This document shows positions 32,113 to 57,361 of a stretch of 64,000 bases of DNA, one piece after another (positions within the stretch are counted from its first letter, which is position 1; each line of letters starts with the position of its first letter). The notes beneath the pieces were generated by a model, which was not told the DNA's origin, searched no databases, and saw only the letters and a list, made by a program, of their open reading frames with translations. Location of the stretch: contig NC_068987.1 of NCBI RefSeq assembly GCF_001194135.2, forward strand, positions 74,956,865 to 75,020,864, read 5' to 3'. This DNA is from Octopus bimaculoides. Taxonomy: Eukaryota. The position numbers and the translations under genes are program-made.

Positions 32113-32418
32113 CATATTGGAAACTGAAAGGTCACAAATTGGTACTCGGAATTTCAACAGCGGAGATTTATGATGAACAGTATTTTAAAAATTACTTGGT
32201 GTGAAGCATGTTAACTGTTATTTGTTAATTCTAATGGTGTGTTTAAGTTATTTCTTACGTTTTATTCCAGGAGGATTGCTCTTTCCAGTCCCGAAAAAGA
32301 ACAATGATGCATTTGGCTAATTCGGAAGAAAATGTAATGTTTACGTATGGAATTTCCTTCCTTCAAATCTACTGTTGTTGACACGTGCTTTTCTCTGTGA
32401 ATCAAAGGAAACCTTCCC

Positions 32419-32521
32419 ATGTTATTTCCACGTGAGAAATCAATTTCAAATGTTGATTTATCTAAGTCAGCTATGATGGAAAGTTTGAAGGATACCAAAG
32501 CAAAACATGAAGTTCTTGAAG
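32419..32521 (+). CDS. MCPH1: MCPH1 coding exon 1 (start uncertain)
   Basis: First in-frame ATG after TGA 32398-32400; MLFPREKSISNVDLSKSAMMESLKDTKAKHEVLE; GAAG|gtaagg phase-1 donor joins next exon as EVLE-EVVAYVEV. Confidence 0.72.
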
Positions 32522-41500: not shown

Positions 41501-44500
41501 TCTCCTCTACTCTGAAAGACAAAATAAAAGTTTGTGTTGTATACAATATCTTTTACTTGTTTCGGTCATTCGACTGTGGCCATTCTAGGGCACTGCTTTG
41601 AAGGGTTTAGTCAAACAAATCGACCTCATACTTGTTTTTCAGGCTGATACTTCTTCTATTGGTTCTTTTATGGGGATGTAACAAAAACCAACACTAGATG
41701 TCAAGCAATAGTAGATGACAACTGCAAACACACACATACATATATTTGACAGGCTGTTTACTATAAATTTGTGTTTTTTTTTTTTGCTATTTTACATGAA
41801 ATTTTCATTACTAATTTAAGACAATTACTTTGAGAACTTGATAAATAGCTTTCCATCCATTAACCATTGAACCGTAAAGTAATAGAGGAGGCTACTTTTT
41901 GTAGGGGGAGGGGATAAGTCAATTACATTGGAGTAAGCAGATTTGTGTCCCTTGTTCACTGTGGAGGCTGTTAGATGTAATGGACTAAGTCTCAATAAAT
42001 AACTAGATAAATATCTTAAAAAGGTGTTTGTCATTGTACCATTTAATGTCAAACGTCCAACTCATGCTAGCATGGAAAGCGGATGTTAAACGACGATGAT
42101 GATGATGTCATTTAGTCCGAAGTCAGTTCCAGTATATCAGACTAAGGGTCAAAGGTGTTTAGCTTTGGCTCCTTGGATCTATTCCATCTCAATCACATAT
42201 TTTTTTAATTAATTTTTTTTAACTAAACAGTTTGAAACTTCAAATAGTGGTAGAACTTCTCATGTAGAACACGGTATACTTTGTGCGTTTTTGACAAAAT
42301 TTCCTATTTTAGAAGTTATTTCATGTTAATGTTGTGTTTGAGTAATTTCAACCAATCAACGATGTGTATTCGGTTGAAGAAAGCTACTGCTGTTTGTGAT
42401 AGTAATCAAAGAGGAACAACTTCTGGGTCATCTCTACTAAATATCACCACTCTTTTCTATTCGTCAAAATATAAAGAAGGATCATTAATTAAAAACAATG
42501 TTTATTTTCCAGTTCAAACAAAATGTACCCCGTTTAACTACACCCCCGAGAATGAAGGAAAGACTCCTTGAATACAGCAGAAGCCAAGGTATGTGTTTGT
42601 GTTTCTCCCATAACTTTATTACTCCATTCTTGTCAAGTCTGTGACTGATATTTCCATGAACTGTACTGCATGCAAAAACTATTTTGTGACAGTAACTTCT
42701 GTTTCTAGTTTAATTAGTCAGACTGTTTTCAGGTTTATGTTGTTTCCTACTCTATGTGTGTTTTGTAACTGTATGTCTATATATTTGTATTTGTGTATAT
42801 ATAGTATTTTCGTTTATTACTGTTTGTCAACAGGAGAGCTATTAAGCTATTATAAATATGATGAAAGTGAAAACCAACACCTGTGGCTTGCACAGCTCTC
42901 TCAACCATTCATCATTAGCGTTTTAGAGAACACCAGAACACTAAGCATAGTATATTATTAACAATCTGTGCCGGTGGCACGTAAATAGCACCGTTCGAGC
43001 GTGATCATTACCAGCGTCGCCTTGCTGGCAATTGTGCCGGTGGCATGTGAAAAAACATTCAAGCGAGGTCATTGCCAGTGCCACTGGACTGGCTCCTGTG
43101 CAGGTGGCAGGTAAAAAACACCATTTGAGCGTGGCCGTTGCCAGTACCGTCTGACTGGCCCTCGTGCCAGTGGCATGTAAAAGCACCCACTACACTCTTG
43201 GAGTGGCTGGCATTAGGAAGGGCATCCAACTGTAGAAACTCTGCCAAATCAGATTGGAGCCTGGTGCAGCCATCTTGTTCGCCAGTCCTCAGTCAAATCG
43301 TCCAACCCATGCTAGCATGGAAAGCGGACGTTAAATGATGATGATGATGATATGGGGGTGGGGTCATGTGTATGTATATATGTGTATGCATGAAGATTTG
43401 AGAGTTAGTTTATTTGTATGCACATTTATTAAGTGGTTCTGTTAGATATAGTTCAGTGAGGGTGGTCTATTGGTACCCAACACTTATTCTAAAATGAAAT
43501 GTGTGTATGTATCTGTATATGTGTGTAAGTGTCTGCATGTCTGTGCATGTATCCTTTAAGCCTGTCTTCAGTGTTGATATTGTTGTAAATTAAGATAATC
43601 TTTCTATTGTCTTTTTTTTTCTCTTCCAGATAACACCCCTATTTGCCATCGTTCTTTCCAGAAACAGATCTTCAGTAAGTATTATACAGTCCCTTTAACT
43701 AGGTACATCTCCTTCATTGTACTGTTTTTCTTCACTTGAAAAGCTGCTCACTGTGTGAATTTGCTGTTCTATGTGCTGAGAATACTGTTCTATTAATCAT
43801 GCCTCATAAATAGCGCTGGTGCCAGTGCCAAATAAAAAGTAGCGTATACACTCTGTAAAATGGTTGGTGTTAGAAAAGACATCCATCTGTAGAAACCAAA
43901 CCAAAACACACAATTGGAGCCTGGTGTAGCTCTCTGCCTGGCCTGCTCTGATCAAAACTGTTCAACCCATGCCAGCATGGAAAATGGACGTTAAATGATG
44001 ATGATACATTATTTACATCATTTACATTTGACGGATATTTGTCCTCATCTTGTCTGCCAAATCAGATTGGAGCCTGGTGTAGCCATCTGGTTCACCAGTC
44101 CTCAGTCAAGTCGTCCAACCCATGCTAGCATGGAAAGCGGACGTTAAACGATGATGATGATGATGATGATGCACATAATATGCACCCAGATAGTTCTTGA
44201 TTCAATATTACTGCATCTGCATAGCAGCCTGTGCATGTGTCTTCAAATGTAACCTAATGTTGACCAATACTTTGTGTATGAAATTTGGTAAATGGAAATG
44301 GCTATGAGTTAAGAAGTTTGCTTCCCAACCACATGGTTCTGGGTTCAGTCCCACTGCATGGCACCAATGTCTTCTACTACAGCCTTGGGCCAACCAAAGC
44401 CTTGTGAGTGGATTTGATGGACAAATTGAAAGAAGTGTGTCATACATGTGTGTCTTTGTGTTTGTCCCCAACCACCACTAGACAACCAGCGTTGGTTTGT

Positions 44501-47500
44501 TTACATTCTCATAACTTAGTGGTTTGACAAAAAGATAACCATAGAATAAGTACCATGCTTAAAAAAAGTAAGTGTTGGTGTTGATTTATTCAGTTCAGAA
44601 ATTCTTCAAGGATGTGCTCCAGCATGGCCACTGTCTAATGACTGAAGCAAGTGAAAGATAAAACAAACCCATTGTTATGTCTAACATCATCTTATATGTG
44701 TATGTGTATTTTTGCTGATATAAGGTGCACATCATATTAAGTAACTTGATGTTCTCTTTTTTAAAGGTGGCTGTAGTAGAAGTTATTGCTGTTGTTTTTT
44801 ATTACTGGCATTAAGAAGGGCATCCAGCTGTAGAAACAATGCCAAAGCGGACAGTGAAGCCTGGTGCATTCTTGCGGCTTGCCAGCTCCTGTCAAACCAT
44901 CTAACCCATGCCAGTATAGAAAACGGATGTTAAATGATTTGAATGCTTATGATGATGATGTGGCTGCAGCTGCTTCAATAACCACTGGTGTGATTGCTGC
45001 AGCCAAGGTCATGGAAGTTGGCATTCAGCTCTCATCTTCTGTGGTCCAGTAAGCTTTGAAGTGGTTTGGTGTACCACGAATGTAAACAATTTGTTTTTCT
45101 ACTTTCGATGACCACCTGTATCTGCTGACACTGTGTGAAATAAAAGTAAAAGGAAATTTCTCCAGAATAACCAGCATAGGGAACTCTAGTGACATTCCCA
45201 TTTGGTTCTCTTGGAGTAGGTGTGGGCTTGAGTTATGTTATTTCTCAATATAATACAGTCAGAACATAGTGATGGGTAAAATACCGCTAAGCATCATCCA
45301 GCATGCTAACAATTCTGCCAGCTCGCCCCCTTAATATTCTCTTACTTGTTTTAGTCATTTGACTGCGGCCATGCTGGAGCACCACCTTTAGTCGAGCAAA
45401 TCGACCCCGGGACTTATTCTTTGTAAGCCTAGTACTTATTCTATCGGTCTCTTTTGCTGAACCGCTAAGTGACGGGGACATAAACACACCAGCATCGGTT
45501 GTCAAGCAATGCTAGGGACACACACACACACACACACACACATAAATATATATATATATATACATATATACGACGGGCTTCTTTCAGTTTCCGTCTACCA
45601 AATCCACTCACAAGGCTTTGGTCGGCCCGAGGCTATAGTAGAAGACACTTGCCCAAGATGCCACACAGTGGCACTGAACCCGGAACCATGTGTTTGGTAA
45701 GCAAGCTACTTACCACACAGCCACTCCTGCGCCTATATGATAATAATAATTTCTAATAAACTGTGTTTTATTCTTTGTAGATGATGGTTCTGATGTAGAG
45801 AACAGTAGCCCTTCTGAAGACAAAGAAATGTTGAAGACTGAGAGTTTTAAGCTACATAATTCTGATGGCTCCACTCAACAGGACAGTTTGGCTTCAGCAT
45901 CTTATCTCTCTATCAACAATCAAATGTCTTTTGTTCCCACCAAGTCGTCCGATCTTACTTGTCTGCCAAATCAACTCGACGTTTTAAATGACACAAAACA
46001 GAATCCTAAAGCAGTAAGTGAAATCGATCAACTGGATCAAAATGCCAAAATAAAAGTCAGTCCAGATTTACCAATGAAGTCATCGATATACTGTTCCATG
46101 ATGTCTTCATCATTAGATGTGAAATCTGCTGAAAATTCTTCTACAGATGTTAGTGATGTTCCTGAGGATGTTGATGTGAATGTGAGCAGCACTGTCTTCA
46201 AGGAAGCTGACATTTTCAGTAACAGTCCTATTGAAAATCTGTCTAGTTCATTACTATCAAGTGACTGTGACACAAGTTTGACAAGCTTCAAAAGATCTCA
46301 GAGGATTTCTAGACAGAAATTTGCTCACAGAGAGACAATGCATGTACTTGGTATTAGTGATGAAGACTATGTCTCATCTAAAACAAGTAGTTTATCAAAT
46401 GCTAACATTCCATCTTATAGAACTGATGATGTAGGTACTAACATATCTAGTTTCACTGTAAATCAGGAGGAAGTATTGATAAATGGCAATACACAAAACT
46501 CAAACACCCTGTCTTCCTTGTTGTCTTGGAAGAGTGTGGGAAGTTTAGACAATTCTCAAGAGAGTAAAGCTTGGGAGATGGAAATTGAGAAAGAGAAACA
46601 AGTCAGAGAGTCACAACAGACATCTTCCTCTTGCTTGGACCAGTCAGATACCATTATCTCAGATGACCAAACTCTTGGGCCCAGAGTCAAGCGAAGGAAA
46701 CTTGACTTCCCTACTACTGTGTCTCTGACTACAAGGAACCTTCGACCTGTCAAGAAATATTTGGTGATGACCAGTATGTCTACCTCGTAAGTAAACTTTA
46801 TGTTAATGGTATTGTCCTCATTAGAGGTAGCATGAAACTTTTGGTAATTTAAGGGTTTACTAAACTCCACAGTAGCATCTTTCATCTCAGTATTGTCACT
46901 CCCTAACTTTAGCAATAGTAGGAACACTATGAATGTTAACACCTCAACTATCGTTGCTAACTGACTTGCCATCAGCCATGTACCATTTATATAATCTATC
47001 TCACATTTTCGTGTAACAGGTGGTAGATAACCTAAAATTATCGTGGACTAGTTTGAAATGAAAACTTTCAGTCTCCCCAAATACAGTTGATACTCACTGA
47101 TTTTTGTAGCCTGTATTTGACGAAAATATGTATTAACCAGTGGTACATCAACTATTTATTATTATACAAAATAGAGTTGTTTTTTTTTTAATGTATAGTT
47201 AATGAAACCCCCTGTTAATGGATGGTACACCTAGTATACCATTTCTACGATATTAACATTTCTTTCCAAATTTCATGTTTTTTTTTTTTGTCTAGTAAAG
47301 GAATACTTTTCATCTTACGAGGTTTTTAGTTTCATTCAACAACCAAATTGCATTTGGGAAGAACCGTCTGGCATTTGCTCTAAATTGCAGCAAAATACAC
47401 CTGCTTGATAATTAGCATGCATTATAAGTTCTTTGTTTGGAGGAAATGACTCTTGTGTATGTGTACCATGTTGGAACATGTCATGCCAGGTGACACTAAT

Positions 47501-49984
47501 ATTTAATGTTTTCTTCTCTTCATACATATGGTATGATATACAATTGCTTCTGACAAGGGACTAAGTTGTCAGATGGAATGAATAATATACATGTTATTGG
47601 GTTGTCCAGAAAGTTTGTGCCGATTTATAGTAGCTTACTTTTCGACTTATTTGCCATGAAGCCACCTCGATTCTGAGAAGAGGGTATTTTCAAGTTAAAG
47701 GAAAGATAGAGACGCATTATGCAACAAAATGGTTCATATTTGGTTGATTAAAAATGTAATGGCAAGTATTTATTGACCTTTTTCATTCCTTTAAAACTCG
47801 GCACGAACTTTCTGGACAACCCAATAGATACACGTTTTCAAAACGTGTATGTACCATTCATGCTTGATTACTAATTTGAAGGTTTTGTTCTTTCTTTTCT
47901 CAAAGAATCCATTTATAAAATCACATCTGGTGAATACATTGAATCAAACCAAGGCCAAATTAACATAAAAACCATGCTGACTGTAAAGGGACTTGATGTC
48001 AAGTTTATGGCACCTCTTCTGTGCACATCCCTTGCTAATAATGAGCACATTAGTATCCATTCTCTTTATAACCCCACTCCCGCAAAAAAATCGACCATGG
48101 TCAGAATTTCCAATCGCATTTAATTGTTTGATCAACAAAACTATTAGCGTCATTGGATTAGCATATAAGTGGCTGAGTAAACTACAGATACTTGTAACCT
48201 TAGCATAATTCTCAAGCATAATTAGCATGTCTGTGTGAAAAGGTTCGACCTTTGAATTACAGGTACAGTTCGTCAGTTTCTGTCTGCCTAGTTTCAGTCA
48301 CAAGTTATAGGTCAATCTGTGGCTATAAACAGCAATGTTTACTGAGGTGCAGCCCTGTGGAATCAAAATAAAGCCTCATGATTGTGAAATGAACTTCTTA
48401 ATAATTTTGCCAGTGGAACTGATGTGGATGATGATGGTTTTGGCTGATGAAGATGCTTCTGAGCATACTCTTCAGGACGAAATATCCAGATGTCAGCTTC
48501 TTTCTGACTACAGTGCAATTCCAGCTTGGGTACTGTCTTTACCATTCCACCATCATCATCATCATCATCGTTTAATGTCCGCTTTCCATGCTAGCATGGG
48601 TTGGACGATTTGACTGAGGACTGGTGAAACCAGATGGCTGCACCGGGCTCCAATCTGATTTGGCAGAGTTTCTACAGCTGGATGCCCTTCCTAACGCCAA
48701 CCACTCTGAGAGTGTAGTGGGTGCGTTTACGTGCCACCGGCACGAAGGCCAGTCAGGCGGTACTGGCAACGGCCACACTCAAATGGTGTATTTTATGTGC
48801 CACCCTCACAAGAGCCAGACCAGGGGCACTGGCAACGATCTCGCTCGAAAGTCCTTACACATGCCATGGCCATGATTCTCTAAAAGTGTATGATACTCTT
48901 TCCCGTATGCTAAGTACACTGTTATGTTCTTGTACACCTCAGCTGAGTACCTCTGCCAAACACGATACTCTACAAATGATTTTTTTTTATTCTCCCCTGT
49001 GTTGAGGAATTTTTTTCACTGGGTTGTTTTGTATGGTTGATCATTTTTATGCCTGTGGCAGCATGATACCTCTTTCAGCACTGTTGAAGTTTATGTTTGG
49101 TGTTAGGAAGGGCATCCAGCTGTAGAAACCATACCAAAATCAAACGGGGAGCCTGAACAGCCCTTCAGCTGGTCAGCTCTTAGCAAACTATCTAATTCAT
49201 GTCAGCATGGAAAGCAGATGTTAAATGATGATGATGATGTTTGGTTAGGCATCTCTCACAAAATGGATCTTGCTTGTTCCTTTTGGTCAGCTTGTTTCAC
49301 TAATCAAAACTTGTTTCGCTAATCAAAACTTGTTTCGCTAATCAAAACTTTTAAAGTTGGAACCCCAGCAAAATCACAATCTGTGACATTAAATATTTTT
49401 TTATATTTTAGATTCTATTTTAGTTCCAAATTTTCTTTATTCAGATATTCATTTTAATAAAAAAAAAAATTCTTTTTTCTTGATTTTTTTTTTTCTGTTT
49501 AAAAATTCATATTTCTATGACTTGGTGTACTTCTAGAGATCAAGAAATGGTGAAATCTGTAGCCAAAACCCTGGGTGAATGCGTAATCAGTGACATTGTG
49601 AAGAAGTCCACGACACATGTAATCTGTGGTATGCCTAGGCGCACACTCAACGTGCTCTTTGCTCTTTCTCAGGGATGCTGGCTTGTCAGTAAAGAATGGG
49701 TAAGTCAAGATTTCATTCTTTAAACATTTAGAATTCAAATTACTTTGTCAGATGTTATTTTTTTTTCATTCACATTGTTTTGAATTAATTATGCATTATC
49801 TCATAGATTTGAGGTTTTGATGGTGTGGTTGTTTATTTTTAAAATGATTTTGTAGGGTGGCTGTAGGAGGTCAGATCAGGCTAGCTTAAACATAAAACAA
49901 GTAGAATATTTGGACCAGATATGGCTGGTTTAAATGCTAATGGGTTAACTAATTCTACTGTTTCATACTACTACTTACTTGTTG

Positions 49985-50020
<36 letters not shown>

Positions 50021-50099
50021 NNNNNNNNNNNNNNNNNNNNNNNNNNNNNNNNNNNNNNNNNNNNNNNNNNNNNNNNTATATATATACATATATATATAC

Positions 50100-50131
<32 letters not shown>

Positions 50132-53100
50132 GCATATATATACGATGGGCTTCTTTCAGTTTTTGTTTACTAAATCCATTCACAAAGCTTTGGTTGGACC
50201 AGGGCTATGCTAGAAGATATTTGCCCATGGTGCCATGCAGTGGGATTGAACCCAAGACCATATAGCTGGGAAGCAAACTTCTTAACCATACAGCCATACC
50301 TGTGCCTATGTGAATGTTAGAAACAATTCTGGCAACCAGTTCCTGTTCTGTTTCAATGACTTGGCCAAATAACGATTAAATTTGGTTGTTGGTGTCCCTT
50401 TCAAGAAGTTTTTCCCATTTTGAGTAGTTGGTTGGTAAACTCAGCTATCCATACATATATTTATGGTAATGCTAAGTCGTAAAGTGTGATGTCATGGTTA
50501 TGATGTTTCTAAATAAATTTTGATCTGATTAGCTTGGAATCCACAAAGAATTACAGCCAGAGCTTGTCTGAAGTTGCCAACAAAAAACAATGGTTACTTC
50601 TCCCCTTATATATGTTTTATCTCTTAGATTTTGCTTTGTCTGATTCAATACTTGACTTGCTCATTTGTAGTTGTAGGTACCATCTTAAATCAACTTGCAT
50701 CTTTGTTGGAGCTCGTCCTTGAGCAAGTTCTCAATATTTCATAGAAGATCATGTGAAATCTAGCTTAAACACATAAGGTGTTGTTCTTCCATCATCCAGA
50801 AGTATTGCTGCAATGCCATTTGATGCAACAACAATTGCAAGAAGCTGCCTTTGGCAGACTTTTGCAAGCAGATTTGTCAGGGATAAATTGCCAGTGCTGC
50901 CAGGAGTATCAATGAAGGAGTGTCTTCTCTTATTTTTTCATGTTTCTCTGATATAGATGCTTCTGGTCATCCATCAAATGAGGTACATTTTCTTTCAGAA
51001 ACTGATTCAAGCCTTGCATACTGTAGTCTGTCTTTTGAAAAACTTCTCATGCTACCTCCACTTCTTCATCTGATTCTGGTATTCCACAAAATCACTTATA
51101 CATATTGCCATTCATATTTTACTTTGATTCAGTCTTCTGACATGTTTTTATATCCCTGGCAGAAAAGATGAGGTTTGTTAATTTCACATGGAGTGAGCAT
51201 AATAGCAAAGAACTCTCATATCTGACTTGCTTAATGAGTCAGATAAGACAGCTGTTTGCTTCTTCTAGAATCTATTTGCGTTGTTCATTGGCTGTGTATG
51301 AATCCATGTAGTTCACATGCTTCTTGGTATGTTGTGTACATCCACTCTGCAAAGCAGCTGAGAACCTCAAGCCACATCAGTCTGTGGAGTGTGTGGAGAA
51401 GGAGCTACAAGTAAAATCATTTTCTATTCTTGGGATTAACAGTGTAAACATACTGTATTTTAACGTGTATAAGGAATCCCCTAATTTTTGGAGCTTAAAA
51501 TTTGGGAAAAAAGTTTTGTAAAGGATTATAATACTATCCATGTATATGAAACTCCCATATTTTTTTAACCTAATTTTTAACAAAAAAAAAAAAATGTTCC
51601 TTATACACATTAAAATACTGTACTCAGTAGCATCATTTACCTTGACTTCTTTGTGACTTACTAAATGACACTACTTCCTTTGATATGTTTGGGTGTAGTA
51701 GGTTTGCAAGTTTATATAGGAAAGACTCAGTGAATTTGTCTTGGTAGCACTGGGCAGACAGAAACTATAACCCTGGTCAACCAGTGCTCTGCAAGTAAAT
51801 TTGGTAGATGGAAATTGTCTGAAGTAAATATGCATGTGTGTATGTCTGTGTGGATGCTTACATTCTGCACGTTGCACTAAAAGGTTCTTGTTTACAAACA
51901 TCACATAGTGTTAAGACAAGGTACACTCAAATATATACACACATGTGTATGTGTTTGAGTGTACCCTTAAAAAGAAACAGTTAAGATGATATTGAATGAT
52001 GCTTGAATCAACTGATGAGTTGTGATCTTTGTGAGGTCCTACTATAAAGTGACCCAGAATATACCTTAATTGAGACACATATTGTGAACTAGGTACTAGA
52101 TATTCTATAGTCAACTAGGTACCTAGATGCTGTTGTTGTTGTTGGCACTCCGTCGCTAATGGCGTCGAGGGTTCCAGTTGATCCGTTCAACGGAACAGCC
52201 TGCTCGTGAAATTAACATGCAAGTGGCTGAGCATTCCACAGACATGTGTACCCTTAACGTAGTTCTCGGGGATAGTCAGCGTGACACAGAGTGTGACAAG
52301 GCTGACCCTTTGAATTACAGGCACAACAGAAACAGGAAGTAAGAGTGAGAGAAAGTTGTGGTGAAAGAGTACAGCAGGATTCGCCACCATCCCCTGCCAG
52401 AGCCTCGNNNNNNNNNNAACGTAGTTCTCGGGGATAGTCAGCGTGACACAGAGTGTGACAAGGCTGACCCTTTGAATTACAGGCACAACAGAAACAGGAA
52501 GTAAGAGTGAGAGAAAGTTGTGGTGAAAGAGTACAGCAGGATTCGCCACCATCCCCTGCCAGAGCCTCGTGGATCTTTGTGTTTTCGCTCAATAAACACT
52601 CACAACGCGCCCGGGCTGGGAATCGAAACCGCGATCCTATGACCGCGAGTCTGCTGCCCTAGCATCCAGACTAATACCATATAGTGGATTAGGTACCATA
52701 CATTGAACTAGGCATACTATATGCTAAACTGTAGTGGACTAGGTAGCATGTGGTGTGCCATATGAACTCAGTACCATGTGGAAGTCTTGGTAGCATATGA
52801 TGAATTAGGTGCCATATGGAGGTTTAGACAGCATGTAGTGAAAAATGTACCATAGAATGAACTAGGTACCATTTCAAAGTTTTCAAAGTTTAGGCAGTTT
52901 AGTGTGAACTAGATGCTGTATGAAAGTTATGGAACCATATAGGGACTAGATACTGTGCAGTAACTAAGAATTGGATATCATGAAACAACTATTGTAGCTA
53001 GCTCTGTACTGTCTGATGTTGTTATGTTATTATGTTTTGATGTCATAGAAGTAAATATGAGTTTCTGTTTTCTCCTTGCAGGTGTCAGCATCAATGGAGG

Positions 53101-56100
53101 CCGGCTGTTGGTTGGATGAGAATAAATTTGAGTTGGTTGCTAGCTATCCTGTGGCCCAGGTAAGGTTATGCTGCTAAGATTTAGTGATCCAGTGTTGTGT
53201 TTGTCTTTCACCAAAACATTCAACTCTGCTTGCCAGAGACTTCATGTCCATTTAAGAAATTGTTATTGTTTATATTTATACAGAAATCCATCACTTACCC
53301 TCTCTCTTACCGAGAGTTATCCTTTCTGACATTCTGACATTACTCTTCCTCTTCCCTTTCTGCTGTTGTCCCCTATTTTTCCTTGTGTCATGGATGGTTG
53401 TTAGGAAGGGTTTAATAAAAGTGTACATGGCGCAGGAGTGGCTGTGTGGTAAGTAGCTTGCTTACCAACCACATGGTTCCGGGTTCAGTCCCACTGCACG
53501 GCACCTTGGGCAAGTGTCTTCTACTATAGCCTCGGGCTGACCAAAGCCTTGTGAGTGGATTTGGTAGACGGAAACTGAAAGAAGCCCATCGTATATATGT
53601 ATATATATAAGTATGTGTTTGTGTGTCTGTGTTTATCCCCCCAACATCACTTGACAACCGATGCTGGTGTGTTTACGTCCCCGTAACTTAGCGGTTCGGC
53701 AAAAGAGACTGATAGAATAAGTACTAGGCTTCTAAAGAATAAGGCCTGGGGTCGATTTGCTCAACTAAAGGCGGTGCTCCAGCATGGCCACAGTAAAAAA
53801 GACTGAAACAAGTAAAAGAGTAAAGAGTATAATATGTAAAGATAATAAAATTTAAGGATTTGGTTACAAAATACAAACACGCAATGTTGTTTTGGATAAA
53901 TATGTATACAGAAGTCATTTAACCCTTTAGTGTTTAAACCGGCCATATCAGGCCAAAATTGTCTTCCTGTTTTATGCTCAAACCAGCCAGCTCTGACCTC
54001 TCACACCTACCCTACAAAGTCATTTTAAAAATAAACAGGGTCATCATCAAAATCTCAGAGTTACAAGATGCTGTACAATTAATTTGCAACCTTGTGAGTG
54101 GATTTGGTAGACGGAAACTGAAAGAAGCCTGTCATATATGTGTGTGTGTGTGTGTGTGTATGTTTGTGTGTCTGTGTTTGTCCCCCCAACACCGATGGTG
54201 GTGTGTTTACGTCCCTGTAACTTAGCGGTTCGGCAAAAGAGACTGATAGAGTAAGTACTAGGCTTACAAAGAATAAGTCTTGGGGTTGATTTGTTCGACT
54301 AAAGGCAGTGCTCCAGTATGGCTGCAGTCAAATGACTGAAACAAGTAAAAGAGTAAAAAGAGATATATATAATATGTGTGTATGTATGCATGTATGTATT
54401 AGTGACGTTTATGAATGTTTTGTGTGTGTGCGTGCATGTGTTGATGCAGTGTGGCTTTTATTCTACCTGGGTTATCTTTTTGCATTGTTATTATTTACAG
54501 TTATATCGTGAACAGAAGCAGCTCAACTCTGGCCCTAAAGTGTTCGATGAGTGTGGGAGTATCTATGTCTCTGCTGTTAAGGCCCCTCCAAAGAAGGATC
54601 TGATTCAGTTATTGCAGCTGTGTGGAGGAAAAGTAAGTAATTAGAAGTCATGTAATGTCTACTGCATTCTTAACAATGGAAACAGTGTGTTGAACTGGCT
54701 GACATATATTCATATCATCATCATCATCATTATTATTTACCATCCATTTTCCATGCTGGCATGGGTTAGACAGTTTGACTGGAGCCAGTTAAGTGGAGAA
54801 CTGTACCAGTTTCCAGTCTGATGTGGTTTGGTTTCTACAGCTAGATGCCCTTCCTAATGCCAACCACTCCAAGAGTGTAGTGGGTATCCTTCTGTGTGTC
54901 ACCAACATGGGTACCTTTTACGTGTCAGCAGCACTGCCACGACTACAATTTTCACTTGGCTTGATGAGTCTTCTGTAGCACAGCAAATTGTTAAAGGTCT
55001 CGATCACTTGTCATTATCTCTGTGAGAACCAACATCCGAAGATCATGCTTCACCACCTCATGCCACATCTTGTATCTACCTCTTCTACAAGTTCTGTCCA
55101 CAGGTAGAAATCAGCACTTCTTTACACAGTTGTTCTCGTCCATATGCATTACATGCCCATACCAGCACAGCTATCTCTCTTGCACACCACATCTGATGCA
55201 TCTTATGCCCAACTTTTCTCTCAAGATACTTACACTCTGTCATACATGCACACTGACATTGTACACCCAGTGATGCATATATGTACCTATATCTGTATTC
55301 ATATACAGACATCCCTTGCATTACAGAAGGATCACATTCACATACTTTGTAATGAAACATGGAATTTCATAGCATAGAGTGTATTTTCCCATTGAATTCC
55401 ATGTTCATCGATTTCCATCTAATATGGAAATCTTTGGTAAAATTTGTTTCATATTAAATGCCACATTACAGCAAGTTTTTTAGGAGCACAATGTTTCCAT
55501 GGTATGGAGGAGGATTATATATTTATACACTTAGATGTATATTTTTATCAGTGTATATCATCATCATTTAATGTCTGTTTTCCTTGCTGGCATGGATTGA
55601 ACAGTTCAACAGGAGCTGGTGAGCAAGAGGATTATCAAGCTCCAGTGTCTACTTTGGTTTTTACAGCTGGATGCTCTTCTTAATGCTAACCACTTTACAG
55701 AGTGTACTGGGTACTTTTTACATGGCAGCTGCACCAGTGAAATCACCAAATAACTTACAAGACAAGGCCCACTCAACTAAGGGGTGTAGTACTGAGGGAA
55801 GTGGCTTTGTGCCGGGTAATGAGAGTTTAAAGTATGATAGAGAGATAGAAACAAGTGTCTTGCTGTAGGGAAGACATATGATTATACTCATCATCGTTGT
55901 TGTCACCGTTATTGTTGTTTAACATCCTCCTTCCATGCTGGCATGAATTGGACGGTTTGACAGGAGCTGGCCAGACAGGAGCCTGCATCAGACTTCTGTG
56001 TCTTTGGGAAAAAAAGAGTCACAAGTATAATCTAAATCTTTTATTCAAAAGCCTTTGTTTAATGATAAGGTTGTTAAGCATGCTGCACTTACACATATTT

Positions 56101-57361
56101 ATATAATCGATTCATGAACAAGAAGCCCCTATCAATAATACATTTATTGAAATAGCACTGAAATTAACAGCCTTTCTTTTTATATTATATTATACAGGTG
56201 AAGAACACGATATGTAATGCTAGTATCTATATTGGTGAGGAGTATCATCCATCCATGATTAGTGTTACTCCTCTTTGGATATTTGGTAAGTTTCATTTGG
56301 TATGGTATTTCTTCTGTTTTTTCGAGCAAGGTGATATTTCCCCATGGCCCAGACATGTTTTCATGGAATATTAGAACGAACGACACTGCTTATATGACAG
56401 TGACACTCATTTTCATCTATCACACAAACATACACACTTCCATACATACATACATACACATATTTCGATGATGTGACTGTTTGTTTTTAGAATGACATTG
56501 TAGGGTAGGTGTGAGAGGCCAGATCTAGCCAGTTTGAAGATAAAACAGGTAAAATATTTGGGATGGATGTGGTCAGTTTAAATGCTGAAAGGCATTCAGA
56601 GTAATCTGAATGCTAAAGAGATTAAGGTTTCTCCGTTTGCTTCTATCATTCTCAAGGCCCTGCAAAAGGTCCTGGGTGTTGTGTTTTCACTTCTGTTTAA
56701 ATAGCAGGTGAAGTCATAAAGGGATGTTGTCTATAATTCCAATAGTTTTCTTTCTGAGAAGGGGTCATTTTCTCTCCTATAGACTTTCTCTCATCCATTG
56801 CTCTGCTGCCGTACACTTCAATTTTCGTATGGTAACTAGGGTTGTAAATTGTAAGAGCAACAGCAGCAGCATTTTTTTTTGTTGATACACAGGAAAACAT
56901 GGAATGAAGTACTGAAGGCTGATCTCAAATCACTGAGCCTTATGAAGGAGGTGACAAAGGACTGAGATATCTGGCACCTTGCTGTACTCAACAAGACCCA
57001 TCCACCACAGTAGAATTGATACTGGTGCTACTGCCATGTAAAAAGCATCCAGTAGATTCTGTAAAGTGATTGGCATTAGGAAGGACATCCAGCCATAGAA
57101 ACCATGCCAGAACAAACAATGGAAGCTGGTGTGGCTCCTGGCCTTTCCAGCTCCTGTTGAACCATCCAGTCCATGCCAGCATGGAAAACTGATGTTAAAT
57201 GATGATGATGATGATGATGACGACAGCGGCGCAAGATCCTTGTACACTGACATATCTCTTTTCTATCTTCTCTATTTCCAGATTCCATCAGTTCAGGAAC
57301 AGCTTTGCCTTTCGATGACTACATGCTTGGCCAACCAAAACCACCAAGTCCAGAATATTAG
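32419..57361 (+). CDS. MCPH1: Microcephalin (MCPH1), 3-BRCT protein, ~742 aa; join(32419-32521,35406-35610,39042-39147,40702-40848,42513-42588,43630-43674,45781-46786,49537-49699,53082-53159,54501-54632,56198-56285,57282-57361)
   Basis: Twelve exons, all GT-AG and phase-consistent, total 2229 nt including stop. BRCT1 EVVAYVEVRS...VTHVIFKDG...LVSVLWVDSC, then CMQPK, BRCT2 LVMTSM...TTHVICG..RTLNVL...GCWLVSKEW and BRCT3 LLQLCGGKV...WIFDSI match recalled human MCPH1. Start codon uncertain (32419 vs 32473/32476). Confidence 0.93.
32690..33050 (-). mobile_element. Family A variant nested in a family B SINE (32540-33135)
   Basis: Family A core flanked by the tail and head halves of family B. Confidence 0.7.
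33906..34157. mobile_element. Old hAT/Charlie-like MITE
   Basis: Termini CAATGGTTCTCAACC / GGTTGAGAATTACTG; TSD degraded. Confidence 0.5.
34215..34649 (+). mobile_element. Family A repeat, long copy
   Basis: Full core plus (GAT)n tail. Confidence 0.85.
35078..35331. repeat. 37-bp minisatellite, ~7 units
   Basis: Units start at 35078, 35115, 35152, 35189, 35226, 35263, 35300; G[TC]GACACCTGTTAACT(ACAAT/CTAGC)AGTTATAAACAGCACA. Confidence 0.95.
35406..35610 (+). CDS. MCPH1: MCPH1 coding exon 2 (BRCT1)
   Basis: ttgcag|AA...ATAG|gtgagt; 205 nt; VVAYVEVRSKSENRSKEVAIELEKLGARISPKLNNEVTHVIFKDGTKRTWDRAKKLGIPLVSVLWVD. Confidence 0.95.
35701..36085 (+). mobile_element. tRNA-derived SINE (family D, tRNA-Arg-like head; possibly octopus OR-type) nested in a family C SINE
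   Basis: Head TGGAGGCGCAGTGGTCCAGTGGTTAGGGCAGCGGACTCGCG, (AAC)n tail, TSD ATTTCATCT 35689-35697 / 36086-36094. Confidence 0.85.
37290..37600 (+). mobile_element. Family A repeat copy
   Basis: Core and tail visible after gap 36898-37273. Confidence 0.75.
38099..38476 (-). mobile_element. Family D SINE, full length
   Basis: Reverse complement of 35701-36085; 12-bp TSD CTTAAAAGCTAT 38087-38098 / 38477-38488. Confidence 0.88.
39042..39147 (+). CDS. MCPH1: MCPH1 coding exon 3
   Basis: atttag|T...AAG|gtaact; 106 nt; SCKRSLQHADEEAFFVSTPHNIAEAEISIFPKKRAK. Confidence 0.9.
40702..40848 (+). CDS. MCPH1: MCPH1 coding exon 4
   Basis: ttacag|GGG...GAT|gtaagt; 147 nt; GFRCMQPKNLNEEFEDSSQRCRRRRKRSHK...DVYFTPVSD (CMQPK conserved; basic NLS-like run). 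Confidence 0.92.
40930..41215 (-). mobile_element. Family A repeat including the last codons of an RTE ORF
   Basis: Minus strand AVLEKTHQAQ* then 3'UTR core and (GAT)n. Confidence 0.8.
42513..42588 (+). CDS. MCPH1: MCPH1 coding exon 5
   Basis: ttccag|TTC...CAAG|gtatgt; 76 nt; FKQNVPRLTTPPRMKERLLEYSRSQ. Confidence 0.85.
42968..43351 (+). mobile_element. Family A repeat, long copy
   Basis: Repeated GTGCC-NNN-GGCAC motifs, core and tail. Confidence 0.85.
43630..43674 (+). CDS. MCPH1: MCPH1 coding exon 6 (45 nt)
   Basis: cttccag|AT...TTCA|gtaagt; phase 1/1; DNTPICHRSFQKQIF. Confidence 0.75.
43810..44170 (+). mobile_element. Two adjacent truncated family A copies
   Basis: Two (GAT)n tails, at ~44005 and ~44170. 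Confidence 0.75.
45336..45734 (-). mobile_element. Family B SINE, full length
   Basis: Head GGCGCAGGAGTGGCTGTGTGGTAAG, B box GGTTCAGT, central (TA)n/(TG)n, tail GACTAAAACAAGTAAGAG on the minus strand; ends 47 nt before the exon 7 start. Confidence 0.88.
45781..46786 (+). CDS. MCPH1: MCPH1 coding exon 7 (large S/D-rich central exon, start of BRCT2)
   Basis: ttgtag|AT...CTC|gtaagt; 1006 nt; contains track ORF 45828-46790; ends PRVKRRK...KKYLVMTSMST. Confidence 0.92.
47597..47824. mobile_element. mariner-type MITE
   Basis: 27-bp TIR TTGGGTTGTCCAGAAAGTTTGTGCCGA / TCGGCACGAACTTTCTGGACAACCCAA (1 mismatch), TA on both flanks. Confidence 0.88.
48551..48870 (-). mobile_element. Family A repeat, young copy
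   Basis: Near-identical to 34215-34649 and 4121-4353 cores. Confidence 0.85.
49291..49350. repeat. 19-bp tandem repeat x3
   Basis: CTTGTTTC[AG]CTAATCAAAA repeated three times. Confidence 0.9.
49537..49699 (+). CDS. MCPH1: MCPH1 coding exon 8 (BRCT2)
   Basis: ttctag|A...TGG|gtaagt; 163 nt; DQEMVKSVAKTLGECVISDIVKKSTTHVICGMPRRTLNVLFALSQGCWLVSKEW. Confidence 0.95.
50450..51560 (-). mobile_element. Decayed Helitron RepHel fragment (PIF1 helicase region), intronic
   Basis: Minus strand, broken frames: YTW; VYTVNPKNRK*FYL*LLLHT; TYQEACELHG; FAIML; ENVPHLMDDQK; FIDTPGSTG (Walker A); LAIVVASNGIAAILLDDGRT; FVGNFRQALAVI; in colinear order with recalled Helitron proteins. Confidence 0.85.
52130..52660 (-). 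mobile_element. Family D SINE, with 152 bp duplicated across gap 52408-52417
   Basis: Matches 38099-38476; extreme 5' head missing. Confidence 0.82.
52670..52960. repeat. Degenerate ~19-bp minisatellite (also 52085-52125)
   Basis: Consensus ~TAGTGAACTAGGTACCATA; 19-bp spacing at e.g. 52690/52709. Confidence 0.7.
53082..53159 (+). CDS. MCPH1: MCPH1 coding exon 9
   Basis: ttgcag|GTG...CAG|gtaagg; 78 nt; VSASMEAGCWLDENKFELVASYPVAQ. Confidence 0.93.
53429..53828 (+). mobile_element. Family B SINE, full length
   Basis: Reverse complement of 45336-45734 at high identity; a partial copy follows at 54090-54360. Confidence 0.88.
54501..54632 (+). CDS. MCPH1: MCPH1 coding exon 10 (BRCT3)
   Basis: ttacag|TTA...AAA|gtaagt; 132 nt; LYREQKQLNSGPKVFDECGSIYVSAVKAPPKKDLIQLLQLCGGK. 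Confidence 0.93.
54710..55265 (-). mobile_element. RTE LINE 3' fragment plus family A tail
   Basis: Minus strand ...DENNCVKKC...WHEVVKHDLR... then core and (GAT)n. Confidence 0.8.
56198..56285 (+). CDS. MCPH1: MCPH1 coding exon 11
   Basis: atacag|GTG...TTTG|gtaagt; 88 nt; VKNTICNASIYIGEEYHPSMISVTPLWIF. Confidence 0.9.
57010..57222 (+). mobile_element. Family A repeat, diverged, in last MCPH1 intron
   Basis: Core and (GAT)n tail ending ~60 nt before the last acceptor. Confidence 0.7.
57282..57361 (+). CDS. MCPH1: MCPH1 last coding exon
   Basis: tttccag|AT; DSISSGTALPFDDYMLGQPKPPSPEY*; TAG 57359-57361. Confidence 0.9.

What the first reader, a model, noticed from the sequence alone, without database searches (positions are those of the whole stretch)
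57347..57361. MCPH1 ends in S-P-E-Y-COOH, a mimic of the ligand its own tandem BRCT binds
Seen: the last exon extends past BRCT3 as GQPKPPSPEY*, and the BRCT2 phosphopeptide-pocket motifs (LVMTSM, RTLNVL) are intact. Established: the MCPH1 BRCT2/3 pair binds pS-x-x-Y/F at a free C-terminus (gamma-H2AX pSQEY, Cdc27 pSDEF); human MCPH1 as recalled has no such tail. Inference: the Ser-Pro is a proline-directed (CDK-type) kinase site, so phosphorylation could create a built-in ligand. That could drive autoinhibition or head-to-tail oligomerisation and compete with gamma-H2AX or APC/C binding, i.e. a phospho-switch I do not know to be described.
Basis: partly seen in the sequence, partly recalled or inferred. 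Interest (0 to 1): 0.8.

Follow-up and report, generated by a model that had tools for sequence, protein, structure and literature searches.

The report
Conserved phospho-tail on octopus microcephalin (MCPH1)
The octopus microcephalin (MCPH1) gene really does end in Ser-Pro-Glu-Tyr, and this tail is an ancient motif (Ser-Pro-x-Phe/Tyr at the very end of the protein) kept from a single-celled relative of animals to corals, molluscs, beetles and amphioxus but lost in vertebrates; it looks like a built-in, phosphorylation-controlled ligand for a BRCT phosphopeptide reader, most likely the protein's own.

Summary
Window 57347-57361 encodes S-P-E-Y-stop, at the end of the sixth and last exon of a cleanly spliced MCPH1 BRCT2/3 region. 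The same C-terminus occurs in independent gene models of Octopus sinensis and O. vulgaris.

The tail is not an octopus quirk. Of the 150 best MCPH1 representatives, 33 end in S-[P/Q]-x-[F/Y]-COOH, with consensus R-E-S-S-P-E-F. They include bivalves, gastropods, a chiton, an annelid, amphioxus, corals, Hydra, beetles and the ichthyosporean Amoebidium. Other beetles keep the Ser at -3 but end in Val. Vertebrates, a hemichordate, a starfish, crickets and thrips lack the tail.

The pocket residues that in human MCPH1 bind the gamma-H2AX phosphate and carboxylate (T653, R693, N696) are invariant in the 45-sequence alignment.

AlphaFold2 orders the octopus tail: pLDDT about 83 for the last 7 residues, against 53 for the last 5 of a same-length tail without the motif.

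Binding to its own BRCT pair is inferred, not shown. The main rival reader is BRCA1-BRCT, whose classic ligand is pSPxF (Abraxas ends SPTF-COOH).

I found no description of this motif in the literature I could search. I rate it a new variant of a known kind, interest about 0.7.

The parts
57347..57361 (+). S-P-E-Y-stop: the terminal tetrapeptide (candidate pS-x-x-Y-COOH motif) and the TAG stop codon
   Evidence: Direct reading. Identical in O. sinensis and O. vulgaris models. Aligns with S-P-x-[FY]-COOH of 32 other MCPH1 representatives.
57329..57346 (+). Linker G-Q-P-K-P-P between the end of BRCT3 (..DDYML) and the motif. The Lys is at -6, where most orthologues have Arg.
   Evidence: R at -6 in 24 of 33 tails, K in octopus. 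The distance from the conserved Trp to the C-terminus is 29-35 residues in all tail-bearers.
57282..57361 (+). Last coding exon of MCPH1: end of the BRCT3 helix alpha3' region (DSISSGTALPFDDYML) plus the 10-residue tail. Acceptor AG at 57280-57281.
   Evidence: The phase fits the one-base overhang (G) of the previous exon.
56198..56285 (+). Penultimate exon (VKNTICNASIYIGEEYHPSMISVTPLWIF + G), BRCT3 beta3'-beta4' up to the conserved Trp. Donor GTAAGT at 56286.
54501..54632 (+). Exon encoding the start of BRCT3 (LYREQKQLNSGPKVFDECGSIYVSAVKAPPKKDLIQLLQLCGGK)
53082..53159 (+). Exon encoding the inter-BRCT linker (VSASMEAGCWLDENKFELVASYPVAQ)
49537..49699 (+). Exon encoding most of BRCT2, including RRTLNVL. 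R53 and N56 of my 197-aa construct equal human R693 (binds the ligand carboxylate) and N696 (binds the phosphate).
   Evidence: Residue roles from PMC8651625. Both residues invariant in the 45-sequence alignment.
45771..46786 (+). Large central exon ending in ..KKYLVMTSMST(S). T13 of the construct equals human T653 (binds the phosphate). Donor GTAAGT at 46787.
   Evidence: T13 invariant.
32347..42587 (+). Upstream MCPH1 exons, with approximate tblastn limits: 32347-32538, 35399-35608 (N-terminal BRCT1), 39040-39147, 40591-40848, 42504-42587
   Evidence: tblastn with O. vulgaris CAI9725748.1. Pfam BRCT hit on 35399-35608 (PF12738, E 1.4e-15).

Best explanation
The window holds the whole MCPH1 (microcephalin) gene of an Octopus species. 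Its last exon adds a 10-residue tail to BRCT3. The tail ends in S-P-E-Y-COOH, the octopus version of a short linear motif, [R/K]-x-x-S-P-x-[F/Y]-COOH, that is ancestral to holozoan MCPH1 and was lost in vertebrates and some other lineages.

Proposed mechanism (inferred):
1. A proline-directed kinase phosphorylates the Ser at -3.
2. This creates a pS-x-x-aromatic-COOH peptide, the ligand type that tandem BRCT repeats read with a phosphate pocket plus a pocket for the +3 residue and its free carboxylate.
3. The most likely reader is the adjacent BRCT2/3 pair of MCPH1 itself. It could bind in cis (self-capping, autoinhibition) or head-to-tail between molecules.
4. The phosphorylated tail would then compete with gamma-H2AX and other pSxx[YF] ligands and gate chromatin and partner binding.

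What is shown: the gene model, the motif, its deep conservation, the intact pocket, and the motif-dependent ordering of the tail in AF2.

For: - Motif and gene model.
- Conservation: 33 of 150 representatives end in S-[PQ]-x-[FY]. Ser at -3 is invariant in these by construction (it defines the set), Pro at -2 is 32/33, E at -1 is 25/33, and F/Y at 0 is 27/6. The preceding linker positions vary (entropy above 3 bits).
- Named taxa with the tail: Octopus x2, Solemya, Mya, Liolophura, Haliotis, Elysia, Owenia, Branchiostoma, Acropora, Hydra, Tribolium, Agrilus (SQEF) and Amoebidium parasiticum. Amoebidium has the MCPH1-type N-terminal BRCT too.
- Six other beetles end in S-x-x-V (SPFV, SPCV, SFAV, SIVV, SLVV, SGAV). 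What is kept is Ser at -3 from a hydrophobic free C-terminus, the signature of a tandem-BRCT ligand, rather than the Pro.
- Reader site: human T653 and N696 bind the phosphate, and R693 (plus K814) binds the terminal carboxylate of gamma-H2AX (PMC8651625). The equivalents T13, R53 and N56 are invariant in 45 aligned sequences including octopus.
- Geometry: the distance from the conserved Trp to the C-terminus stays within 29-35 residues in all 33 tail-bearers.
- AF2: the octopus BRCT2/3 plus tail gives mean pLDDT 95.8, and the last 7 residues (KPPSPEY) average 83. A natural homologue with a tail of the same length but no motif (P0089), run with the same alignment, gives 53 for the last 5 residues and 80 (against 94) for the block before.
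- F/Y interchange matches the two ligand types reported for human MCPH1: gamma-H2AX ..SQEY and the Cdc27 C-terminus (interaction cited; the pSDEF sequence is from my own knowledge).
- Precedents: self-oligomerisation through BRCT2/3 is reported for vertebrate MCPH1 (PMC8774270). TopBP1 self-associates via its own pS1159 and BRCT7/8 (PMC7949146).
Against: - There is no direct evidence that the Ser is phosphorylated or that the tail binds any BRCT.
- AF2 output gave no coordinates, so I do not know that the ordered tail sits in the phosphopeptide groove. AF2 does not model phosphate. The control tail also mismatches the alignment columns, which alone could lower its pLDDT.
- S-P-x-F is the optimal BRCA1-BRCT motif, so another reader is fully plausible.
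- The pocket residues are equally invariant in tail-less species, because they also read gamma-H2AX. Their conservation therefore does not discriminate between readers.
- The K814 equivalent is Leu in octopus (..TPLWIF).
- I found no clean co-variation between tail type and pocket residues. The F-to-V change in beetles has no matching pocket change (my reading of the sequences printed), and the tail versus no-tail column associations are confounded by phylogeny.
- Vertebrate MCPH1 is reported to self-oligomerise without a tail, so the tail is not needed for that.
- No transcript evidence for this species.
Confidence: 0.5

Rival explanations
1. The tail is a phospho-ligand for another tandem-BRCT protein, above all BRCA1 (or BARD1, MDC1, PTIP, TopBP1). 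Like Abraxas, BACH1/FANCJ and CtIP, MCPH1 would dock onto BRCA1-BRCT through a CDK-type pSPxF motif. This would physically couple MCPH1 to BRCA1 in non-vertebrates. Vertebrates would have lost this link or moved it to other adaptors.
For: BRCA1-BRCT binds pSPxF (PMC4747905). Abraxas ends in pS406-P-T-F409-COOH, with the terminal carboxylate salt-bridged to R1699. That matches the R-E-S-S-P-E-F-COOH consensus of MCPH1 tails in form. Abraxas also carries a second Ser two residues upstream (S404), and MCPH1 tails often have a second Ser at -4. Pro at +1 is 32/33 and F is the majority last residue, 27/33.
Against:
- Octopus, Mya, Acropora and others have Tyr, and six beetles have Val without Pro. 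To my knowledge BRCA1-BRCT strongly prefers Phe.
- The tail is only 8-14 residues from a folded domain, and its length is tightly constrained. That is unexpected for a motif read purely in trans.
- AF2 orders the tail on its own domain.
- This rival is not exclusive with self-binding.
Confidence: 0.25
2. The tail is a conserved element whose role does not depend on phosphorylation. It could be a structural cap packing on BRCT3 or on the inter-repeat groove as an unphosphorylated pseudo-ligand. It could instead be a different C-terminal motif, such as a degron, a localisation signal or a binding site for a non-BRCT partner.
For: AF2, which knows nothing about phosphate, already orders the unphosphorylated tail. 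A conserved basic residue at -6 and Glu at -5 and -1 could serve non-phospho contacts. The exact C-terminal position could equally suit a C-degron or another carboxylate-reading module.
Against: The Ser is invariant in every motif-bearing tail and Pro at +1 is nearly invariant, which gives the minimal site for a proline-directed kinase. In beetles the register 'Ser exactly three residues before a hydrophobic free C-terminus' is kept even though the other positions changed. This is the defining geometry of tandem-BRCT ligands. It is not that of class I PDZ ligands, which need S/T at -2 (my knowledge).
Confidence: 0.15
3. Chance or annotation artefact: the S-P-E-Y ending is a fortuitous read-through of a mis-called last exon, with no function.
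For: No RNA-seq was available for this species. The first canonical poly(A) signal lies about 1.7 kb downstream. A single tetrapeptide is statistically cheap.
Against: The acceptor is canonical with the correct phase. The ending is identical in two other Octopus annotations. The same motif lies at the exact C-terminus in phyla from Ichthyosporea to Chordata, including transcript-derived sequences (Logan/ENA contigs of 2-4 kb and the Amoebidium transcriptome).
Confidence: 0.02

Closest known systems
gamma-H2AX C-terminal tail (pS139-Q-E-Y142-COOH) read by the MCPH1, MDC1, PTIP and 53BP1 tandem BRCT repeats
   Same: Ser three residues before an aromatic residue that is the very last residue of the protein. 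In human MCPH1 the phosphate is held by T653/N696 and the free carboxylate by R693 (+K814) (PMC8651625). The same pocket residues are present in octopus.
   Different: The kinase site is S-P (proline-directed), not S-Q (ATM/ATR/DNA-PK). One beetle, Agrilus, does have S-Q-E-F. The motif sits on the reader protein itself, 8-14 residues after its BRCT3, not on a histone.
Abraxas/ABRAXAS1 C-terminus (pS406-P-T-F409-COOH) and the other BRCA1-BRCT pSPxF ligands (BACH1/FANCJ, CtIP)
   Same: Identical motif form, S-P-x-F, at a free C-terminus. The carboxylate is read by the Arg equivalent to MCPH1 R693 (BRCA1 R1699). There is often a second Ser just upstream (PMC4747905).
   Different: The known reader is BRCA1, not MCPH1. 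Octopus has Tyr rather than Phe. MCPH1 tails carry a conserved Arg/Lys at -6 and Glu at -1 and -5. The motif is directly appended to a tandem BRCT.
TopBP1 pS1159 - BRCT7/8 self-association
   Same: A BRCT protein carries a phosphosite that is read by its own tandem BRCT. This switches partner choice (PMC7949146).
   Different: The TopBP1 site is internal, phosphorylated by Akt, and acts in trans (oligomerisation). The MCPH1 tail is C-terminal, proline-directed and close enough to act in cis.
Human/vertebrate MCPH1 (BRIT1)
   Same: Orthologue with the same architecture (N-terminal BRCT, long disordered middle, C-terminal BRCT2/3). The fold matches at TM about 0.9. BRCT2/3 is reported to direct self-oligomerisation.
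   Different: Ends 20 residues after the conserved Trp (..ENYLLSQ) with no tail.

Membership tests
MCPH1 / microcephalin orthologue | Architecture: one N-terminal BRCT plus a C-terminal tandem BRCT pair in one gene | tested here: met
   tblastn of O. vulgaris CAI9725748.1 maps 11 colinear exons from 32347 to 57361. Pfam BRCT hits on the N-terminal exon and on both C-terminal repeats.
MCPH1 / microcephalin orthologue | The C-terminal BRCT pair is closest in sequence and fold to human MCPH1 BRCT2/3 rather than to BRCA1, BARD1 or MDC1 | tested here: met
   PDB phmmer: 3sht/3szm at E about 2e-17 against BARD1 at about 1e-5 to 1e-6. Foldseek: MCPH1 entries at TM 0.87-0.91 and E about 1e-22 against BARD1/BRCA1 at about 0.7 and 1e-14. 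Named best hits are 'microcephalin-like'. The RefSeq name 'BRCA1 homolog' for O. sinensis is a misnomer.
MCPH1 / microcephalin orthologue | Phosphopeptide pocket residues of human MCPH1: T653, R693, N696 (and K814) | tested here: met
   T13, R53 and N56 are invariant in alignment A1. Their roles come from PMC8651625. The K814 equivalent is Leu168 in octopus, so this auxiliary contact is not kept.
pS-x-x-[Y/F]-COOH tandem-BRCT ligands (gamma-H2AX type) | Ser at -3 from an aromatic residue that carries the free C-terminal carboxylate | tested here: met
   S-P-E-Y followed directly by TAG. Conserved in 33 of 150 representatives.
pS-x-x-[Y/F]-COOH tandem-BRCT ligands (gamma-H2AX type) | The Ser is phosphorylated in vivo | not testable with these tools
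   No phosphoproteome was accessible. Only indirect support: near-invariant Pro at +1 (32/33) gives a minimal proline-directed kinase site.
pS-x-x-[Y/F]-COOH tandem-BRCT ligands (gamma-H2AX type) | Phospho-dependent binding to a tandem BRCT groove | tested here: inconclusive
   AF2 orders the tail (pLDDT 83, against 53 for a tail without the motif). No coordinates are returned and no phosphate is modelled, so the docking site is unknown.
BRCA1-BRCT pSPxF ligands (Abraxas, BACH1, CtIP) | S-P-x-F with Phe at +3 | tested here: not met
   Octopus has Tyr at +3. Most orthologues (27/33) do have Phe, so the family-wide motif fits but the octopus copy does not strictly. The motif definition is from PMC4747905.
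BRCA1-BRCT pSPxF ligands (Abraxas, BACH1, CtIP) | Binding to BRCA1 BRCT of the same species | not testable with these tools
BRCT proteins with a self-ligand (TopBP1 pS1159-BRCT7/8 type) | Reader domain and candidate phospho-ligand on the same polypeptide | tested here: met
   The tail starts 3 residues after the invariant Tyr185 at the end of BRCT3, in the same exon.
BRCT proteins with a self-ligand (TopBP1 pS1159-BRCT7/8 type) | Kinase-dependent self-association or autoinhibition | not testable with these tools
   This needs biochemistry. The only hint is the report of BRCT2/3-directed self-oligomerisation in vertebrate MCPH1, which has no tail.

The most novel reading that the evidence does not exclude
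MCPH1 is ancestrally a self-gated gamma-H2AX reader. A proline-directed (cell-cycle) kinase phosphorylates its own C-terminal [R/K]xxSPx[F/Y]-COOH tail. The tail then folds back into, or bridges to, the BRCT2/3 phosphopeptide groove and shuts out gamma-H2AX and other ligands. This switch has been kept since before the origin of animals and was discarded in vertebrates, so the human protein that has been studied is the exception.
Probability: 0.4. Interest if true: 0.8.

Novelty: new variant of a known kind. Interest (0 to 1): 0.72.

Why it matters
MCPH1 is a primary-microcephaly and tumour-suppressor protein. Its C-terminal BRCT pair has been studied almost only in human, mouse and chicken, the lineage that lacks this tail.

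If the tail is a phospho-switch, it adds a regulatory layer to a DNA-damage and chromosome-condensation factor: cell-cycle kinase control of gamma-H2AX reading, or of coupling to BRCA1. That layer is older than animals, so vertebrates must have replaced or dispensed with it.

The motif gives a very cheap, sharp experiment (four peptides and one recombinant domain). It also gives a clean genetic handle, S-to-A or deletion of the last four codons, in tractable tail-bearing species such as Tribolium, Hydra and possibly other cnidarians, and amphioxus.

It would also be a rare case of a tandem BRCT carrying its own C-terminal ligand.

Tried and rejected
- The search for homologous proteins with a crude concatenated query and with the 45-sequence profile returned only 10 and 5 hits. 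Neither returned any cephalopod. This word-indexed search was of no use for the census. The exhaustive representative search gave the data.
- I could not get squid, cuttlefish or nautilus sequences, or Drosophila melanogaster MCPH1. Conservation within cephalopods therefore rests on three Octopus species only.
I used a natural homologue with a same-length tail lacking the motif instead.
- I looked for co-variation between tail type and the protein's own pocket. The beetle F-to-V change has no matching change in RT[IL]N[ML]L, the BRCT3 beta1'-alpha1' loop or W[VI]LD (read by eye from the sequences). A column-by-column Fisher scan of tail versus no-tail puts a His three residues after the phosphate-binding Thr on top (39/46 against 20/82). 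This is largely vertebrates against the rest, and octopus itself has Ser there. I rejected it as evidence.
- The primary structural papers on MCPH1-gamma-H2AX and MCPH1-Cdc27 (PMC3437875, PMC3268443) are not held. Residue roles come from a review, and the Cdc27 pSDEF sequence is from memory.
- Literature searches for the motif found nothing relevant: SSPEF/ESSPEF/SSPEY, MCPH1+SPxF, and MCPH1 with tandem BRCT, C-terminus and invertebrate or orthologs.
- A PDZ-ligand reading was rejected because the Ser is at -3, not -2.

Full report
**1. The observation.**
Window 57347-57361 reads AGT CCA GAA TAT TAG, that is S-P-E-Y-stop. It closes an exon that begins at 57282, behind a pyrimidine-rich tract and an AG. 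The exon encodes (D)SISSGTALPFDDYMLGQPKPPSPEY.

Using three distant homologues as tblastn probes, and reading the junctions by eye, I rebuilt the C-terminal part of the gene. It has six exons with GT-AG borders and consistent phases..46786, 49537-49699, 53082-53159, 54501-54632, 56198-56285 and 57282-57361.

The spliced 210-residue product is 98% identical to the C-terminus of Octopus sinensis XP_029638881.2 and O. vulgaris CAI9725748.1. Both stop at the same Tyr. The window differs at 5 of 210 positions from O. sinensis (6 from O. vulgaris), so it is probably a third Octopus species. With the O. vulgaris protein, the whole gene maps colinearly from about 32347 to 57361, including the N-terminal BRCT.

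**2. Identity.**
The best solved-structure match by sequence is human microcephalin BRCT2/3 (3sht/3szm, E about 2e-17), well ahead of BARD1 and BRCA1. An AlphaFold2 model of the 197-residue region (45-sequence alignment, mean pLDDT 95.8, pTM 0.90) superposes on 3sht/3szm at TM 0.87-0.91 and rmsd about 1.9 A.

According to a review of BRCT-phosphopeptide structures, human T653 and N696 hold the gamma-H2AX phosphate. R693, helped by K814, holds the carboxylate of the terminal Tyr (PMC8651625). The equivalents T13, R53 and N56 are invariant in the 45-sequence alignment. The K814 equivalent is Leu in octopus.

Human MCPH1 (835 aa) ends ..ENYLLSQ, 20 residues after W815, so it has no tail.

**3. 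The tail is ancient.**
An exhaustive phmmer search of 1.84 billion representatives returned 150 best MCPH1-like proteins, and I read their C-termini.

- 33 end in S-[P/Q]-x-[F/Y].
- Within this motif-defined set, Pro at -2 is 32/33, Glu at -1 is 25/33, Phe/Tyr at 0 is 27/6, Arg at -6 is 24/33 and Glu at -5 is 17/33.
- Linker positions -7 to -11 are highly variable.
- The consensus is R-E-S-S-P-E-F-COOH. Octopus has K-P-P-S-P-E-Y.

Cluster look-ups gave names. The tail occurs in these taxa:
- bivalves: Solemya, Mya
- a chiton: Liolophura
- gastropods: Haliotis, Elysia
- an annelid: Owenia
- a cephalochordate: Branchiostoma
- cnidarians: Acropora, Hydra
- beetles: Tribolium (SPAF), Agrilus (SQEF)
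- the ichthyosporean Amoebidium parasiticum (DSPEF), whose protein also has the MCPH1-type N-terminal BRCT

Six other beetles end in S-x-x-V (SPFV, SPCV, SFAV, SIVV, SLVV, SGAV). The Pro and the aromatic residue can change, but a Ser exactly three residues before a hydrophobic free C-terminus stays.

Of 51 representatives with a 27-36-residue extension after the conserved Trp, 45 have this Ser(-3)/hydrophobic(0) pattern. Human and the vertebrate-like representatives are tail-less, as are Ptychodera, Patiria, Gryllus and Megalurothrips (mode: 20 residues after the Trp). The tail is therefore the ancestral state, with several independent losses.

Several tail-bearing sequences come from transcript-sized contigs or transcriptomes. 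That argues against gene-prediction artefacts.

**4. What the motif is.**
A Ser at -3 from a hydrophobic residue carrying the free carboxylate is the geometry read by tandem BRCT repeats. Examples are gamma-H2AX pSQEY-COOH with MCPH1, MDC1, PTIP and 53BP1, and Abraxas pSPTF-COOH with BRCA1, where the terminal carboxylate is salt-bridged to R1699, the equivalent of MCPH1 R693 (PMC4747905).

The near-invariant Pro at +1 makes no major contact in the Abraxas complex. It is better read as the mark of a proline-directed kinase. The conserved basic residue three positions before the Ser would fit an Arg-preferring CMGC kinase such as DYRK, but that is speculation from memory.

**5. Who reads it.**
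Four things favour MCPH1's own BRCT2/3.

(a) The motif is appended 8-14 residues after the very domain that binds this ligand class in human, and the pocket is intact.

(b) The length from the conserved Trp to the C-terminus is confined to 29-35 residues in all 33 cases. This suggests a geometric constraint relative to the domain.

(c) AF2 places the octopus tail with confidence: 94 for residues 181-190 and 83 for KPPSPEY. With the same alignment, a natural homologue whose tail has the same length but no motif drops to 80 and 53.

(d) The Phe/Tyr interchange, and the beetle Val forms without Pro, fit a generalist pS-x-x-hydrophobic-COOH reader better than BRCA1, which to my knowledge strongly prefers Phe.

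Against this:
- No coordinates were returned, so I cannot say the tail lies in the groove.
- AF2 has no phosphate, and the control tail mismatches the alignment.
- Pocket conservation does not discriminate, because tail-less species keep the pocket too.
- I found no convincing co-variation.

The BRCA1-type reading therefore remains a serious rival, and the two readings are not exclusive. Precedents for a BRCT protein reading its own phosphosite exist (TopBP1 pS1159-BRCT7/8). BRCT2/3-directed self-oligomerisation has been reported for vertebrate MCPH1, although that protein has no tail.

**6. Novelty.**
Full-text searches found no description of a C-terminal SPxF/SPxY motif in MCPH1. The queries were the motif strings, MCPH1 with SPxF, and MCPH1 with tandem BRCT, C-terminus and invertebrate or orthologs. 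Reviews of MCPH1 do not mention it in the passages I searched. The likely reason is that the species studied experimentally lack the tail.

The ligand type and the idea of a BRCT self-ligand are both known. New here is a deeply conserved C-terminal copy on a gamma-H2AX reader itself. I file it as a new variant of a known kind.

**7. Verdict.**
Self-binding is plausible, and AF2 orders the tail in cis, but neither phosphorylation nor binding is demonstrated.
- Confidence that the tail is a functional conserved motif is about 0.95.
- Confidence that it is a phospho-BRCT ligand is about 0.7.
- Confidence that its reader is MCPH1's own BRCT2/3 is about 0.45-0.5.
- Interest is 0.72.

Noticed in passing
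protein level: P0137, P0138, P0104, P0125, P0149, P0092 (beetle MCPH1 C-termini): Six beetles (Henosepilachna, Brassicogethes, Ceutorhynchus, Rhynchophorus, Sitophilus, Diabrotica) end in S-x-x-V-COOH instead of S-P-x-F. Tribolium keeps SPAF. Agrilus has SQEF, an ATM/ATR-type SQ site like gamma-H2AX.
   Followed up: partly
window 56276-56284 and 46779-46786/49537: Octopus-specific substitutions sit next to the presumed ligand site. W-I-F replaces the near-universal W-[VI]-L; that Leu aligns with BRCA1 L1839, which lines the +3 pocket. Ser replaces the His found three residues after the phosphate-binding Thr in 39 of 46 tail-bearing homologues. It is unexplained whether these go with the Tyr ending and the Pro-rich linker.
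   Followed up: partly
O. sinensis XP_029638881.2 (P0011): The RefSeq name 'breast cancer type 1 susceptibility protein homolog' is a misnomer, because the protein is MCPH1. That model (605 aa) also lacks the N-terminal BRCT exons. These are present in the O. vulgaris model (772 aa) and in this window at 32347-39147.
   Followed up: yes
window 11888-12682 (+): A 265-codon open frame, Ser/Asn/Thr-rich, with no Pfam match. It lies about 20 kb upstream of MCPH1 exon 1 and may be a terminal exon of a neighbouring gene. It was not identified.
   Followed up: partly
window 57099-57250 (also 4169-4327, 6049-6381, 43129-43335, 44858-45049, 49107-49319, 54750-54990, 55590-55700): There are many copies, on both strands, of a short interspersed repeat whose translation reads ..WHGLDG../..HASMESGR... 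One copy, followed by a (GAT)n microsatellite at 57200-57222, lies about 50 bp upstream of the last-exon acceptor.
   Followed up: no
window 52160-52501, with the N run at 52408-52417; also the N run at 50021-50076: Assembly gaps lie inside MCPH1 introns. The sequence on both sides of the 10-N gap is duplicated (..NVVLGDSQRDTECDKADPLNYRHNRNRK twice), which looks like an assembly artefact. No coding exon appears to be lost, since all exons of the O. vulgaris protein are found.
   Followed up: partly
window 3497-3931 (+) and 20347-21174 (+): These open frames have the look of retrotransposon remnants (..[28 protein letters not shown]..). There was no Pfam hit at E<=0.01. The identification is from memory only.
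   Followed up: partly
alignment A1, positions -6 to -4 of the tail: Arg (Lys in octopus) is conserved three residues before the phospho-acceptor Ser, and a second Ser often lies directly before it (R-E-S-S-P-E-F). R-x-x-S-P resembles the DYRK-type consensus (from memory), and S-x-x-E is a CK2-type site for the upstream Ser. Double phosphorylation, as in Abraxas pS404/pS406, is conceivable.
   Followed up: no
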